A DNA stretch of 64,000 nucleotides from Octopus bimaculoides (Eukaryota). The position numbers and the translations under genes are program-made. The stretch covers positions 92,534,475 to 92,598,474 of the forward strand of contig NC_068989.1 in assembly GCF_001194135.2 (NCBI RefSeq), written 5' to 3'. Within the stretch, counting starts at the first letter, position 1, and each line of letters opens with the position of its first letter. Below, piece after piece: positions 1,909 through 20,431 of this stretch. The notes below the pieces were generated by a model that made no database searches, was not told the DNA's origin, and saw only the letters and a program-made list of their open reading frames with translations.

Positions 1909-2019
1909 TATATATATATATATTAATAGTAATAGTATGACAACAAAAGAATGAATGAGACCTCGATGTTATGCAAATTGGGGAATTTATCTGTAATATA
2001 ATATGTGACAATTATTCGG

Positions 2020-2093
2020 TTGCCTTAATAGAACTCCGAGTTTCGGATGTCGGGCGGAAATCTGCTCCGGCATCTCGTCAATTATTAAGACAA
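2020..2093 (-). ncRNA. Mirror copy of hammerhead family A (degenerate: C3->U, one stem I mismatch)
   Basis: Minus-strand reading of the left palindrome arm: TTGTCTTAATAA-TTGACGA-...-GAAACTCGGAGTT-CTATTAAGGCAA. Confidence 0.55.
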
Positions 2094-2136
2094 AACAAAA
2101 ATGTTTATATATTCAAGAAATGCAGGCATTTTTGTT

Positions 2137-2210
2137 TTGTCTTAATAACTGACGAGATGCCGGAGCAGATTTCCGCCCGACATCCGAAACTCGGAGTTTT
2201 ATTAAGGCAA
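2137..2210 (+). ncRNA. Type I hammerhead ribozyme motif (family A)
   Basis: Stem I TTGTCTTAATAA(2137-2148)/TTATTAAGGCAA(2199-2210), 12 bp with one GU; core CTGACGA 2149-2155; stem II GATG../..CATC with one extra C before GAAA (2186-2189); palindromic stem III AAACTC-G-GAGTTT; predicted GUU cleavage after 2198. Confidence 0.7.
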
Positions 2211-2330
2211 CCGAATAATTGTCACATATTATTTTACTGGTATATATATATATATATATATGTAACATATGGTAGAATTATAAGCAGGGCAAACTTTTAG
2301 CCATTTCTCCGCAGACTATAAAAAAAAATT

Positions 2331-2380
2331 AACGACCTTAATCGATTTTCGAACTTTACTGGGTTCACATCAGAGGTGTT
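2331..2380 (-). ncRNA. Minimal type I hammerhead motif (family B, copy 1; A9->U)
   Basis: Minus strand: AACACCT-CTGATGT-GAAC ccagtaaa GTTC-GAAA-ATCGATT-A-AGGTcGTT; perfect 4-bp stem II, palindromic AATCGATT stem III, stem I with one bulge. Confidence 0.65.
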
Positions 2381-2622
2381 CTCATCACTTTGACAATCCC
2401 CAGTGAAATAAGCAACCAAACTGTTTATATATTCAACAAATTCAACAGTTACTCTATGAAGAAGTCCCTAATTTGCATACCGAAAGTGCTTAACACACTA
2501 TAAATACCAGCGGAAATCTTAGCACACAGAGTATCGGGGTATAATATAACATATACGTTACATATGGTATAATTTTAAACAGGGCAAATTTTAGCCATTT
2601 CTTCGCTGTCTCTGATTAAGAT

Positions 2623-2666
2623 GAACAACCTTAATCTATTTTCGAAGCTTACTGTGTTCTCTTCAG
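2623..2666 (-). ncRNA. Minimal type I hammerhead motif (family B, copy 2; intact core, 5' stem I truncated)
   Basis: Minus strand: CTGAAGA-GAAC acagtaa GCTTC-GAAA-ATAGATT-A-AGGTTGTTC; the 5' strand of stem I is lost to the adjacent (TA)n. Confidence 0.6.
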
Positions 2667-2667
2667 A

Positions 2668-2714
<47 letters not shown>

Positions 2715-3219
2715 TATTATAGACACAAACACACAGTCACGCACACAGACAGACAGACACACACACACACGCACAGAGAAACACGCAGGCACACACTCAT
2801 ATATGTATATATGTATTGTGAGTAAGTGTGTATATTGGGATATCTACCTTCCTGTTTGCAGATTTACAAACGGGAAAACCCGTTTCTCTATATGTATATG
2901 TGCGTGTATATTTGTGTGTGTATTTGTGTGTGTATATGACTTCCAGGTGAGCGTAGTTGACTTCATAGAGTTTTCCATAAAAGCTGACTTAAACATAACT
3001 ACAACGATGGCTGATCAATTGGGCTTTGGATATAAACACGCACACGTACAGACGTATGCACACGCATACATATACACACACAAACACACGTATTCGCTCA
3101 CGTGTACACTCACATACTGGCACACATAAATATGTGTGTGAGCGTGCATGCGAGTATGTGTATCTGTTTTTACATCTTACATCTTATATAAGCATATATA
3201 TATTATATATATATACAAA

Positions 3220-6716: not shown

Positions 6717-7858
6717 ATCATAAATATACAGGGATTAGCATTGAGTTGCTTCTCCAACATACTGAAAATTTAGAAATAGCAGTCAAAGAACTACTGATTC
6801 TAAACTACAAATTTTTCTCTAAACGGATGGCGATATTTATGGCACACATAGAACGAAAAACCGGAGGGAAAAGCGTAAACAAAACAAGTCTTTAGTTAAT
6901 TGGATACGAATTTTCGTTCTATGTGTGCCATAAATATCGCCATCCGTTTAGAGAAAAATTTGTAGTTTAGAATCAGTAGTTCTTTGACTGCTATTTCTAA
7001 ATTTTCAGTATGTTGGAGAAGCAACTCAATGCTAATCCCTGTATATTTATGATGATAAATGGTTTTACCGATAAAGGTTTTTTCATACTGAACTACTTGG
7101 CAAAATTGTTAATTATTAATTATATTATTAATTGACGATTCCCTGCCCTTATTCTTGTATATATATATATATATATATACATATGTATGTACGTATGTAT
7201 ATATATGTATANNNNNNNNNNNNNNNNNNNNNNNNNNNNNNNNNNNNNNNNNNNNNNNNNNNNNNNNNNNNNNNNNNNNNNNNNNNNNNNNNNNNNNNNN
7301 NNNNNNNNNNNNNNNNNNNNNNNNNNNNNNNNNNNNNNNNNNNNNNNNNNNNNNNNNNNNNNNNNNNNNNNNNNNNNNNNNNNNNNNNNNNNNNNNNNNN
7401 NNNNNNNNNNNNNNNNNNNNNNNNNNNNNNNNNNNNNNNNNNNNNNNNNNNNNNNNNNNNNNNNNNNNNNNNNNNNNNNNNNNNNNNNNNNNNNNNNNNN
7501 NNNNNNNNNNNNNNNNNNNNNNNNNNNNNNNGTTTTGTTTACGCTTTTCCCTCCGGTTTTTCGTTCTATGTGTGCCATAAATATCGCCATCCGTTTAGAG
7601 AAAAATTTGTAGTTTAGAATCAGTAGTTCTTTGACTGCTATTTCTAAATTTTCAGTATGTTGGAGAAGCAACTCAATGCTAATCCCTGTATATTTATGAT
7701 GATAAATGGTTTTACCGATAAAGGTTTTTTCATACTGAACTACTTGGCAAAATTGTTAATTATTAATTATATTATTAATTGACGATTCCCTGCCCTTATT
7801 CTTGTATATATATATATATATATATACATATGTATGTACGTATGTATATATATGTATA
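6717..7858. repeat. Exact inverted (143-bp arms) plus exact direct (301-bp) duplication around a gap; probable assembly artefact
   Basis: 6717-6859 = reverse complement of 6911-7053; 6911-7211 = 7558-7858; no differences found, even in TA-repeat length. Confidence 0.85.
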
Positions 7859-8567: not shown

Positions 8568-9313
8568 GCCTTTGAATAGCTTTTAACGCTGGATATGTAC
8601 TAAGGTAACACCTCTTATTTTTCAAGCACCTTCCAGAGTATTCGAGCGGTTCCAAGCAGTGCTGTTTTCTGCAAGTGCTCCACCCTTTTTGCAGCCCCTA
8701 TTTGTTCCACGTACTTCTCTAGACTTTTGCTCACGGTTCACATGGCTCCGCAAATTATTGGTACTACTGCTACCTTTTTCATCGACCACAACTGCTTAAC
8801 CTCCCAAGCTAACCTGTCATACCTCCCTACTTTTCTTTCTTCCTTATCGCATACCTTGTTGTCAGCTGGGCATGCTATATCTACGATCCAGCATAGTTTG
8901 TTTTCTTTCTCAATTAACACTATGTCTGGCTTCCTTTTCTCCATCTCATGGTCGCACTGAATCATAAAATCCCATAGGGTTTTTGCATTTCTATTTTCTA
9001 CAATGCTTTCAGGTTTATGGTCGTACCAATTTTTTCCTCTGTCAGGTCCATACTTGTTGCAAAGTGTCCAATGGACAAGCCTGGCTATATTATCGTGGCG
9101 TCTGTTATATTCCTTCTGAGCTAGTGGCATACATTGACTGGTAATATGCCATACGGTTTCACTGTCTTGTCCACAGATTCTGCACTTATCACTTTCTGCT
9201 GTGTTGTCTAATTCTATTTTATGTAGTTTGTTCTTAGTGCTTGCACTTGGGCAGCACAAATTAGAGCCTCCGTTTCCGGTTTTAAATCACTTTTAGTCAT
9301 CCACAGCCATCTT
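8568..9313 (-). mobile_element. 5'-truncated R4/Dong-clade non-LTR retrotransposon (CCHC knuckle plus restriction-like endonuclease)
   Basis: WLWMTKSDLKPETEALICAAQ (frameshift) ...CRICGQDSETVWHITSQC...RRHDNIARLVHW...WYDHKP...LWDFMIQCD...KPDIV...VDIACP...VVPIICGA(M*)TVSKSLEKY...LQKTALLGTARILWKVLEK* (stop 8615-8617); 47-bp 3' UTR, then (TAA)n. Confidence 0.9.
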
Positions 9314-19225: not shown

Positions 19226-20431
19226 GGTCATCCCAATTTTTTTCTGTTGCATGGACTAAGAGTCGGAGGGGGACGGGATAAACTACCTGCACCAACTTGT
19301 TACAAAACAGGTAGTAATCTACACTTTTGACCTTATTCTTAGTGCAACTTTTGAAGAGTGCAGTTCGATTTTAACAGTTATTTCTTTCAACGTTATAATG
19401 TAAGTGACAAAGGGGTATATTCGGTATATTTTGCTTTATGAGTTCAATAAAGGCAACAAGGCATCGGAAAGTGCGAAGAATATTAATGCAGTATATGAGG
19501 ATCGAACAATAAGTGTAAGGCAGTGTCAACGGTGGTTCCAGAAATTCCGAGCTGAAATCTACATTCTAGAAGATGAGCCTCGTCCTGGAAGATCTCGTCG
19601 TAACTGTTGCGGAACTAGCAGAGAAGATTTGACTTGGTCATTCGACCATTCATCGACACGTGCATGCCATCGGAAAAGTCAAGTAAATTAGGTCAATGGG
19701 TTCCTCGCATACTTTCCGAGTCTAATCACGCGCAGGGTGAATATCTGCTCTTCTTTACTGTCATGTCTCACGAATGAACCTTTTTGGACCGAATAGTGAC
19801 TGGTGACGAGAAATGCGTTCTCTATAAAATTGTCAAGCGCCGAAGAGAGTGGGTCGGGAAAGGAGAAACACCGGCACCCGCATAAAGTGGTGTTATATGT
19901 TTGGTGGGATATGAAAGGTTTAGTCCACTTTGGACTTTTAAACCCAAACCAAATGATAACAAAGGAGATCTATTATTGCGAGCAGCTTGAGTGGCTTAAG
20001 TGAGCGCTCGAAGAACGACGACCTTTTTTTGGTTTCGAGACCAAAGGTGTTCTTCCATCAGGATAATGCTCGGCCACATACAACGAGGAAGACATTCCAA
20101 AGGCTGGAGCACTTTGAATGGGAAACGATGCCCCACCCACCATATTCGCCAGACATTGCCCCATCTGATTATCATTCATTCCACAGTCTTCAAAATTATT
20201 TCGACGGAAAAAAATATGAATTCTGTAGACGAGGTTAGAACAAAAGGAATATTTTTCATCACAGACAATTGAATTTTGGAAAAGAAGCCTTGCATGTCTA
20301 ACAGATACATGGAAGAGCATTGTAGAACATGAAGGAGAGTATATTTTAGATTAAAAAATGACTTGGTTTAACTTAATTTTGAAAAATAAAGGAAGTATAA
20401 AAAAAAACGCATCATTTATGGGATGACCTAA
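19223..20431 (+). mobile_element. Near-full-length decayed mariner (D,D34D) inserted in (TA)n
   Basis: TIRs TTCGGTCATCCCA (19223) / TGGGATGACCTAA (to 20431); HTH YILLYEFNKGNKASESAKNI..RQCQRWFQKFR; IVTGDEK, VWWD, HQDNARPH and HPPYSPDIAPSDY with 34 aa between the last two Asp; multiple frameshifts and an internal deletion. Confidence 0.92.

What the first reader, a model, noticed from the sequence alone, without database searches (positions are those of the whole stretch)
2263..2670. Retrozyme-like 293-nt tandem repeat with two hammerhead motifs (candidate circRNA-producing element)
Seen: two diverged direct repeats on the minus strand each fold as a minimal type I hammerhead. Copy 1 (2331-2380) is AACACCT-CUGAUGU-GAAC/GUUC-GAAA-AUCGAUU-A-AGGUcGUU. 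Copy 2 (2623-2666) is CUGAAGA-GAAC/GcUUC-GAAA-AUAGAUU-A-AGGUUGUUC. Predicted UUA cleavage sites at 2339 and 2632 bracket a 293-nt monomer, and the unit lies between (TA)n tracts. Known: animal non-LTR retrozymes are tandem 170-400-nt monomers delimited by type I HHRs that give circular RNAs, and Penelope-like elements carry minimal HHRs with palindromic stem III that cleave as dimers. Inference: this is a cephalopod retrozyme/Penelope-derived family. Each copy here has one defect (A9->U; truncated stem I), so these may be relics of an active consensus.
Basis: partly seen in the sequence, partly recalled or inferred. Interest (0 to 1): 0.85.

Follow-up and report, generated by a model that had tools for sequence, protein, structure and literature searches.

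The report
Decayed hammerhead-ribozyme retroelement fragments
Two head-to-tail, mutated fragments of a small mobile element that once carried a self-cutting hammerhead RNA sit inside a (TA)n microsatellite; this is an ordinary relic of a known kind of animal retroelement and is not shown to make circular RNA.

Summary
On the minus strand, two about 115-nt direct repeats (2668-2553 and 2374-2258) are 82% identical and 293 nt apart. Each begins with a type I hammerhead-like motif and ends in the same tail followed by a TA tract. Copy 1 has helices I, II and III and every core base except A9 (U). A motif of this quality with a palindromic helix III is expected 0.001 times per shuffled window. Copy 2 and a 12-nt paralogue inside copy 1 both carry A at that position, so the ancestral core was probably intact.

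Both present copies are broken. Copy 2 lacks the helix I 5' strand, has a weakened helix II and has lost the helix III palindrome. Only 1.4 units exist, the "monomer" is not unusually self-paired, and Rfam's hammerhead models report neither copy. I found no other copy in the window or in any collection I could reach. The host could not be identified, so "cephalopod" is unverified.

Best reading: a decayed stack of differently 5'-truncated copies of a hammerhead-bearing retroelement of the Penelope-like/retrozyme lineage, inserted in a (TA)n microsatellite. It is a new member of a known kind, of modest interest.

The parts
2709..2723 (-). Possible third, extremely 5'-truncated tail end (TCTATAATACCATAT), directly followed by the (TA)21 tract
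   Evidence: TACCATAT occurs 4 times in the window on both strands. Three are on the minus strand of this locus (2716, 2569, 2274), each after a TATAAT / AATTA / AATTC context (family D3). Suggestive only.
2671..2712 (.). (TA)21 microsatellite 5' of unit B; either the target microsatellite or the (TA)n tail of an upstream unit
   Evidence: TRF: 21 copies, 100% matches.
2553..2668 (-). Repeat copy 2 (unit B): 5'-truncated unit made of a hammerhead-like motif plus a 3' tail ending ACCATATGTAACGTATAT
   Evidence: blastn and MAFFT against copy 1. Homology starts at TCTGA, 1 nt before the core.
2623..2666 (-). Hammerhead-like motif, copy 2. The core CUGAAGA...GAAA and the UUA site (A17 = 2632) are intact. 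The helix I 5' strand is absent, helix II is 3 bp plus a C-C mismatch, and helix III reads AAUAGAUU, which is no longer palindromic
   Evidence: Sequence; hits the relaxed descriptor only; MFE does not give the hammerhead helices.
2540..2555 (-). Degenerate TA-rich tract (TATATGTTATATTATA) between unit B and unit C, at the position homologous to the (TA)10 that follows copy 1
   Evidence: Alignments.
2382..2539 (-). Unit C body, upstream of hammerhead copy 1. It has no counterpart in unit B, and its 5' boundary as an element is unknown
   Evidence: No other match in the window apart from a 31-nt 87% match to the neighbouring MITE centre. All three minus-strand frames are closed.
2376..2388 (-). 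Internal paralogue of the core plus the helix II 5' strand (GUGAUGAGAACAC), 15 nt upstream of the real core. It overlaps the helix I 5' strand and carries A at the position equivalent to A9
   Evidence: Family D9; 10/15 match of the two 15-mers.
2331..2381 (-). Hammerhead motif, copy 1. Helix I is GAACACCU/AGGU(C)GUU, the core is CUGAUGU (A9->U), helix II is GAAC/GUUC with an 8-nt loop, then GAAA, then helix III AAUCGAUU (8-nt palindrome). A17 is at 2339
   Evidence: Only locus in the window matching the descriptor with at most 1 core mismatch. Expected 0.001 per shuffled window once the palindromic helix III is required. Helices I and II appear in the MFE. The helix III homoduplex is -6.1 kcal/mol.
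2262..2330 (-). 3' tail of copy 1, with GAAATGGCTAAAAGTTTGCCCTG and the terminal ACCATATGTTAC
   Evidence: Aligned to the copy 2 tail. The motifs are unique to this locus in the window.
2241..2261 (.). (TA)10 tract 3' of copy 1; either the element's tail or the other half of the target microsatellite
   Evidence: TRF: 10.5 copies, 100% matches.

Best explanation
This is a decayed remnant of a short hammerhead-bearing retroelement of the Penelope-like-element / non-LTR-retrozyme lineage. Two copies, and perhaps a third, lie head to tail on the minus strand. They are 5'-truncated at different points. Each ends in the same 3' tail (…ATTnTACCATATGTwAC) followed by a TA tract. The stack sits in a (TA)n microsatellite.

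Shown: the repeat structure, the hammerhead anatomy, the flanking TA tracts and the defects.

Inferred: the ancestral element had an intact type I hammerhead (GAACACCU-CUGAUGA-GAAC…GUUC-GAAA-AUCGAU-U-A|AGGUyGUUC). Its short palindromic helix III would make it cleave best as a dimer in multimeric transcripts. Copies were probably made by target-primed reverse transcription starting about 77 nt downstream of the cleavage site, primed on or in (TA)n. Variable 5' truncation or template jumps would then give the partial tandem (a pseudo-LTR-like layout).

The present locus is very probably inactive. Copy 1 has A9->U. Copy 2 has no helix I 5' strand, a weakened helix II and a broken helix III palindrome. 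In the dimeric arrangement each composite active site inherits one of these defects. It cannot be decided here whether the full-length parent is a retrozyme-like unit of about 290 nt or the 3' end (pLTR) of a kilobase-sized Penelope-like element.
For: The two repeats are homologous with a 293-nt offset (K2P 0.205).

The hammerhead descriptor hits only this locus. It is expected 0.075 times per shuffled window, and 0.001 times once the palindromic helix III is required.

The defects are complementary. At the A9 position, copy 2 and the internal paralogue at 2388-2376 both have A. At helix I and helix III, copy 1 is intact. An exact-core motif with these helices is expected 0.005 times per shuffled window, and 0 of 1000 shuffles produced one with the palindrome.

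The architecture matches published canonical metazoan type I HHRs: helix I about 6 bp, helix II 4 bp, helix III 1-2 bp with a 2-4-nt palindromic loop, active as dimers (PMC4209133; PMC7229834; PMC6155905).

The insertion context fits. PLEs form partial tandems with an upstream 5'-truncated copy, carry HHRs in pLTRs, and several clades prefer (TA)n targets (PMC8557442). [quoted passage not shown] Here the repeat ends about 77 nt after the predicted cut.

All copies end at the same tail plus TA tract but start at different points.

The substitutions between copies break pairs rather than compensate, and the ribozyme is no better conserved (37/44) than the tail. This fits neutral decay.
Against: Rfam's curated hammerhead covariance models do not report either copy, even at E<=10 on 60-70-nt slices.

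There is no second locus of the family in 56.7 kb of non-N window sequence. Nothing related turned up in metagenome or viral contigs, or through spurious-ORF protein searches. A multicopy family is therefore assumed, not shown.

I saw no Penelope-like RT or GIY-YIG reading frame, but I screened only nine ORFs against Pfam.

There is no covariation, because there are only two copies.

The helix I 5' strand of copy 1 overlaps a 12-nt internal near-duplicate of the core and helix II strand. An alternative alignment, with a 15-nt insertion in copy 1, would make helix I a secondary product.
Confidence: 0.7

Rival explanations
1. One reading: a genuine non-LTR retrozyme array. The 293-nt monomers would be delimited by type I hammerheads, produced by rolling-circle reverse transcription of a 293-nt circRNA, and still a candidate source of circRNA.
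For: The offset of 293 nt lies within the published 150-450-nt monomer range, and GC is 35%, below the 45% limit. The hammerhead is of the canonical type (helix II 4 bp, helix III 2 bp plus tetraloop), as in invertebrate retrozymes, rather than the helix-III-less min-HHR of PLEs. Retrozymes and PLE pLTRs are reported to be homologous anyway (preprint 10.64898/2026.07.22.740005).
Against: Only 1.4 units are present, and TRF detects no array. The upstream unit begins 1 nt before the core, so its ribozyme cannot form. The units are separated by TA tracts of different lengths (21 repeats, about 8 degenerate repeats, 10 repeats), and there is a possible 14-nt third tail. Seamless rolling-circle copies would not look like this. 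The circular 293-mer has MFE -59.2 kcal/mol, z = -0.8 against 300 shuffles, and is 55% paired, so it is not 'highly self-paired'. Both ribozymes are defective, also in the dimeric arrangement. No other copies were found.
Confidence: 0.2
2. One solo insertion of a hammerhead-bearing fragment was later partly duplicated locally, for example by unequal exchange or slippage between the TA tracts. On this view the two copies do not reflect the element's own transposition.
For: TA tracts sit at every junction and could mediate misalignment. No other family members are visible.
Against: A microsatellite-mediated duplication should duplicate everything between two TA tracts. Here copy 2 lacks the 158-nt body and the helix I strand. 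All copies share the 3' end but differ at the 5' end, which is the signature of reverse transcription from the 3' end.
Confidence: 0.08
3. Chance resemblance: the repeated 115-mer belongs to an unrelated repeat, and the hammerhead-like features are coincidental.
For: Rfam hammerhead models are silent. Each single copy matches only a relaxed descriptor, expected 0.07-0.2 times per shuffled window. There is no covariation and no demonstrated activity.
Against: With the palindromic helix III the expectation drops to 0.001 per window. The canonical base is present in the other copy, or in the internal paralogue, at every defective core or helix position. The (TA)n context and the partial-tandem layout independently match HHR-bearing retroelements.
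Confidence: 0.05

Closest known systems
Metazoan non-LTR retrozymes (Cervera & de la Pena 2020, PMC7229834)
   Same: Type I hammerhead with a 4-bp helix II and a 2-bp helix III capped by a palindromic tetraloop. AT-rich unit (35% GC). Repeat offset of 293 nt, within the 150-450-nt range. Head-to-tail copies on one strand.
   Different: Only 1.4 units rather than dimers to multimers. The upstream ribozyme is truncated. TA tracts of unequal length lie between the units. The monomer is not unusually self-paired (z = -0.8). Both ribozymes are mutated. Neither a multicopy family nor circRNA is shown.
Pseudo-LTRs of Penelope-like elements carrying hammerheads (Cervera & de la Pena 2014, PMC4209133; Craig et al. 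2021, PMC8557442; Frangieh et al. 2024, PMC11167929)
   Same: Partial tandem with an upstream 5'-truncated copy. The hammerhead lies in the repeated part. The copy ends some tens of nt downstream of the ribozyme. (TA)n microsatellite context. Dimer-type short helix III.
   Different: No RT/GIY-YIG reading frame lies between or beside the repeats. The repeats are 115 nt and are separated by 178 nt rather than about 3 kb. The ribozyme has a real, if short, helix III and a 4-bp helix II. The typical PLE min-HHR lacks helix III and, in Schistosoma, has a 7-8-bp helix II.
Classical hammerhead satellite or SINE-like repeats (newt satellite 2, Schistosoma Sm-alpha; reviewed in PMC6155905; details partly from my own knowledge)
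   Same: Type I hammerheads of a few hundred nt, embedded in repeated non-coding units and working as dimers through an extended helix III.
   Different: Those are abundant families with conserved, active ribozymes. Here there is a single decayed locus. ARAGORN found no tRNA-like part.

Membership tests
Hammerhead ribozyme, type I | Conserved core C3 U4 G5 A6 N7 G8 A9 / G12 A13 A14 / A15.1-U16.1 / H17 | tested here: inconclusive
   Copy 1 has every position except A9 (U at 2367). Copy 2 has all core positions. Copy 2 and the internal paralogue at 2388-2376 both point to an ancestral A9.
Hammerhead ribozyme, type I | Three helices around the core, with helix I open-ended | tested here: inconclusive
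   Copy 1: helix I 7 bp plus a 1-nt bulge, helix II 4 bp, helix III 2 bp plus the UCGA loop (8-bp palindrome as a dimer). Helices I and II appear in the MFE. Copy 2: the helix I 5' strand is missing, helix II is 3 bp, and the helix III palindrome is broken.
Hammerhead ribozyme, type I | Recognised by curated covariance models (the Rfam hammerhead families) | tested here: not met
   No hammerhead family is reported at gathering score for the window, nor at E<=10 for 2200-2720, 2322-2388 or 2612-2672.
Hammerhead ribozyme, type I | More than a chance match | tested here: met
   Descriptor with at most 1 core mismatch and a palindromic helix III: observed 1, expected 0.001 per shuffled window.
Hammerhead ribozyme, type I | Compensatory base changes in the helices across copies | tested here: not met
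   There are only two copies. All differences in helices II, III and I disrupt pairing or fall in bulges or loops, and none is compensatory.
Hammerhead ribozyme, type I | Site-specific self-cleavage | not testable with these tools
   Needs in vitro transcription and cleavage assays.
Non-LTR retrozyme | Tandem array of at least two full monomers (150-450 nt), each with a hammerhead | tested here: not met
   1.4 units; only about 115 nt are repeated; TRF finds no period-293 array; the upstream hammerhead is truncated.
Non-LTR retrozyme | Low GC (<45%) | tested here: met
   35% GC for 2631-2339.
Non-LTR retrozyme | Highly self-paired monomer RNA | tested here: not met
   Circular MFE -59.2 kcal/mol, z = -0.8 against 300 dinucleotide shuffles, 55% paired. 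The sequence is decayed, so this counts only weakly against descent.
Non-LTR retrozyme | Multicopy family in the genome | not testable with these tools
   No second copy in the window. The host genome is absent from every collection I could reach.
Non-LTR retrozyme | Expression as circular RNA | not testable with these tools
   No RNA data are available.
Penelope-like element (pLTR fragment) | Partial tandem with an upstream 5'-truncated copy forming direct repeats that carry the hammerhead | tested here: met
   Unit B (115 nt, truncated) lies upstream of unit C (at least 275 nt). Both end at the same tail.
Penelope-like element (pLTR fragment) | Microsatellite, often (TA)n, insertion context | tested here: met
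   (TA)21 upstream, (TA)10 downstream, and a degenerate TA tract between the units. The preference itself is from PMC8557442.
Penelope-like element (pLTR fragment) | Associated ORF with RT and GIY-YIG endonuclease | tested here: not met
   All frames of the 158-nt body are closed. Nine window ORFs scanned against Pfam gave only a Mos1 HTH. The RT-like fragment at 8741-9286 has no Pfam hit, and the only RT domain recorded on genes of the contigs that carry its two closest relatives is RVT_1. The screen of the window was not exhaustive.

The most novel reading that the evidence does not exclude
The locus is a fossil of an undescribed family of small hammerhead retroelements in this, possibly cephalopod, genome. 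On this reading the units carry a (UA)n 3' tail and integrate into (TA)n microsatellites by target-primed reverse transcription, and intact members still self-cleave as dimers and give circRNAs. That would tie retrozymes mechanistically to the (TA)n-targeting Penelope-like machinery. A side point is that the helix I 5' strand looks like a 15-nt duplicate of the core plus the helix II strand, which hints at how this ribozyme's helix I arose.
Probability: 0.3. Interest if true: 0.45.

Novelty: new member of a known kind. Interest (0 to 1): 0.3.

Why it matters
Type I hammerheads in short repeats and in Penelope-like pLTRs are already known across animal phyla, molluscs included, so a decayed copy adds little on its own. 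The modest value is twofold. First, if the host is a cephalopod, the papers I could search contain no specific report of hammerhead retroelements there, so the sequence gives a seed for a genome-wide search. Second, the layout (a common 3' tail plus a TA tract, with different 5' ends, inside a (TA)n microsatellite) is the footprint expected if such elements are copied by target-primed reverse transcription, as Penelope-like elements are, rather than from circles. That bears on the open question of how animal retrozymes are mobilised.

Tried and rejected
1. Rfam at gathering score on the whole window, and at E<=10 on three slices. No hammerhead family was reported; the only matches were low-complexity or snoRNA-like noise.
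2. Self-BLAST and mismatch-tolerant pattern searches for further copies in the window. None found.
3. Exact-pattern scan of the most conserved 19-mer. Six metagenome hits, none with a CUGANGA core or similar flanks on inspection, so I judge them chance matches. No viral contigs matched.
4. Using spurious ORFs across the element and the neighbouring MITE as protein queries, to fish out other genomic copies. No candidates, apart from one marginal and irrelevant hit.
5. Host identification. I tried the RT-like ORF, which returned only unnamed ENA contigs at 63-70% identity whose DNA is unrelated. I also tried exact-protein look-ups of four window ORFs, none of which was on record. The host stays unidentified.
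6. Literature string search for the ribozyme sequence. No papers.
7. tRNA-derived SINE idea, prompted by GTTCGAA resembling a B box. ARAGORN found no tRNA-like gene. Rejected.
8. The idea that the body of unit C is a decayed copy of the adjacent MITE. Only a 31-nt central match exists, significant but not extendable. Left unexplained.
9. A GIY-YIG reading of 'AGIYSV' in one frame of the body. The frame is open for only about 35 codons and has no YIG. Rejected by inspection.

Full report
**What is there.**
On the minus strand, 2670-2241 reads as follows. After a (TA)21 tract (2712-2671) come 'GAT' and then TCTGAAGAGAACACAGTAAGCTTCGAAAATAGATTAAGGTTGTTC…, which is copy 2. About 70 nt of tail follow, ending ACCATATGTAACGTATAT. 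Next is a degenerate TA-rich tract (2555-2540), then a 158-nt body (2539-2382). Copy 1 follows: GAACACCT-CTGATGT-GAAC-CCAGTAAA-GTTC-GAAA-ATCGAT-T-A-AGGTCGTT. The same kind of tail ends ACCATATGTTAC, and (TA)10 (2261-2241) closes the locus.

- The two copies align from TCTGA to the TA tract with two 1-nt gaps: 96/117 identical, K2P 0.205.
- They are exactly 293 nt apart (family D4).
- TRF confirms both TA tracts but reports no period-293 array, because only 1.4 units exist.

**Is it more than chance?**
I wrote a hammerhead descriptor: CUGANGA, a helix II hairpin, GAA, A15.1…U16.1, H17, and helix I with one bulge allowed. I ran it on both strands and on dinucleotide-preserving shuffles of the window.

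| Descriptor | Observed in window | Expected per shuffled window |
|---|---|---|
| ≤1 core mismatch, helices I≥7, II≥4, III≥2 | 1 locus (copy 1) | 0.075 |
| Same, plus helix III must be a 6-10-nt palindrome | 1 locus (copy 1) | 0.001 |
| Exact core, same helices | 0 | 0.005 |
| Exact core, same helices, palindromic helix III | 0 | 0 of 1000 shuffles |

Copy 2 passes only relaxed descriptors. Its core is exact, helix II has 3 bp, and its 'helix I' is weak G-U pairing with the microsatellite.

The defects are complementary. Where copy 1 departs from the consensus (A9→U), copy 2 has A. Where copy 2 departs (no helix I strand, a C-C mismatch in helix II, C→A in the helix III palindrome), copy 1 is canonical. 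In addition, copy 1 carries a 12-nt paralogue of its own core and helix II strand 15 nt upstream (GUGAUGAGAACAC, 2388-2376, against CUGAUGUGAACCC, 2373-2361). That paralogue has A at the A9-equivalent position, as copy 2 does. Two independent comparisons therefore point to an intact ancestral CUGAUGA.

**Evidence against the hammerhead reading.**
- No Rfam hammerhead model reports either copy, at gathering score or at E≤10 on slices as short as 61-67 nt.
- With two copies there is no covariation. All differences in helices are disruptive, and the ribozyme (37/44 identical) is no better conserved than the tail.

I take the motif as a real but decayed hammerhead, not a functional one.

**Anatomy compared with the literature.**
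Helix I has 7-8 bp with one bulged pyrimidine. Helix II has 4 bp with an 8-nt loop. Helix III has 2 bp closing a UCGA tetraloop, so AAUCGAUU is an 8-nt palindrome (homoduplex -6.1 kcal/mol). This is the published 'canonical metazoan type I' design:
- Helix I about 6 bp, helix II 4 bp, helix III 1-2 bp with a 2-4-nt palindromic loop, inefficient as a monomer and active as a dimer in tandem transcripts (PMC4209133; PMC6155905).
- The note that invertebrate retrozyme HHRs have a 2-bp helix III capped by a tetraloop (PMC7229834).

In the dimeric arrangement each active site joins the core strand of one copy to the substrate strand of the other. At this locus one composite site inherits A9→U and the other lacks helix I. 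The heteroduplex helix III also has a mismatch (-1.2 kcal/mol). The locus should be inactive or nearly so. This is an inference; that A9 is part of the invariant core is established knowledge.

**Tandem retrozyme or stacked truncated copies?**
Several features argue against seamless rolling-circle copies of a circle:
- Unit B starts 1 nt before the core, so it is a 5'-truncated unit, not a full one.
- The junctions carry TA tracts of different lengths: 21 repeats, about 8 degenerate repeats, and 10 repeats.
- Immediately upstream of the (TA)21 lies TCTATAATACCATAT, which resembles the last 13-14 nt of the tail. TACCATAT occurs four times in the window, three of them on this strand in this locus.
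- The 293-nt RNA folded as a circle is unremarkable: -59.2 kcal/mol, z = -0.8, 55% paired.

The pattern 'same 3' end, different 5' ends, head to tail' is the footprint of reverse transcription primed at the 3' end with variable truncation or template jumps. It is also the partial-tandem, pseudo-LTR layout described for Penelope-like elements. Those carry hammerheads in the repeated part, and several clades favour (TA)n targets (PMC8557442). In the one PLE studied in vitro, reverse transcription starts 111-118 bp into the ORF, and the hammerhead cut site is 26 bp after the start codon (PMC11167929). By my arithmetic that places RT initiation roughly 85-92 nt downstream of the cut. Here the repeat ends about 77 nt after the predicted cut. 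[quoted passage not shown]

Unit C could itself be truncated. I therefore cannot say whether the parent was a unit of about 290 nt or the end of a kilobase-sized PLE. No PLE reading frame is visible next to the repeats.

**Family and host.**
- No other copy exists in the 56.7 kb of non-N sequence of the window.
- The collections I could reach do not contain the host. A 19-mer scan gave six metagenome hits, which I judge to be chance matches on inspection, and none in viral contigs.
- Protein searches with spurious ORFs across the element and the neighbouring MITE found nothing.
- An RT-like ORF at 8741-9286 hits only unnamed ENA contigs at 63-70% identity, whose DNA is unrelated.
- Four exact-protein look-ups failed.

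The window is 31% GC counted over all 64,000 positions, Ns included. It is riddled with microsatellites and N gaps (7312 N), and it carries a mariner fragment. It is a draft animal-like genome, but 'cephalopod' remains unverified. In the searchable literature I found no specific report of hammerhead retroelements in cephalopods. Surveys do state that such repeats occur 'from molluscs to arthropods'.

**Verdict.**
It overreaches on three points: a 293-nt tandem retrozyme, circRNA production, and the host clade. The locus is an old relic (about 20% divergence between the copies) and almost certainly inactive. It is a new member of a known kind, of modest interest, and useful mainly as a seed for a genome-wide search.

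Noticed in passing
window 1985-2245: MITE-like near-perfect palindrome: 119-nt arms that are 95% complementary, with a 23-nt centre. It abuts the (TA)10 that follows hammerhead copy 1. A spurious 109-aa ORF runs through it. No relatives were found in the protein database.
   Followed up: partly
window 2094-2124 and 2414-2444: A 31-nt, 87% identical match between the centre of the MITE and the body of the hammerhead unit (p about 0.002 against shuffles). It does not extend in either direction and remains unexplained.
   Followed up: partly
window 2709-2723 (minus strand): TCTATAATACCATAT, directly upstream of the (TA)21, resembles the last 13-14 nt of the element's tail. It may be a third, extremely truncated copy.
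   Followed up: partly
window 2358-2388 (minus strand): The core plus the helix II 5' strand occurs twice, 15 nt apart (GUGAUGAGAACAC and CUGAUGUGAACCC). The helix I 5' strand, GAACACCU, overlaps the upstream copy, so helix I may have arisen by duplication of the helix II strand.
   Followed up: partly
window 19404-20235 (+): Mos1/mariner transposase fragments: HTH_48 at E 9.5e-20, and a DDD-region-like ORF with no Pfam hit.
   Followed up: partly
window 8741-9286 (-): A 182-codon open frame resembling the C-terminal part of a non-LTR retrotransposon protein. The best relatives, at 63-70% identity, are in unnamed ENA contigs that also carry RVT_1 ORFs. It has no Pfam hit of its own.
   Followed up: partly
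window 7158-7179 and 7805-7826: Two (TA)11 tracts with identical 24-nt upstream and 12-nt downstream flanks, on either side of an N gap. This is probably an assembly duplication around the gap.
   Followed up: no
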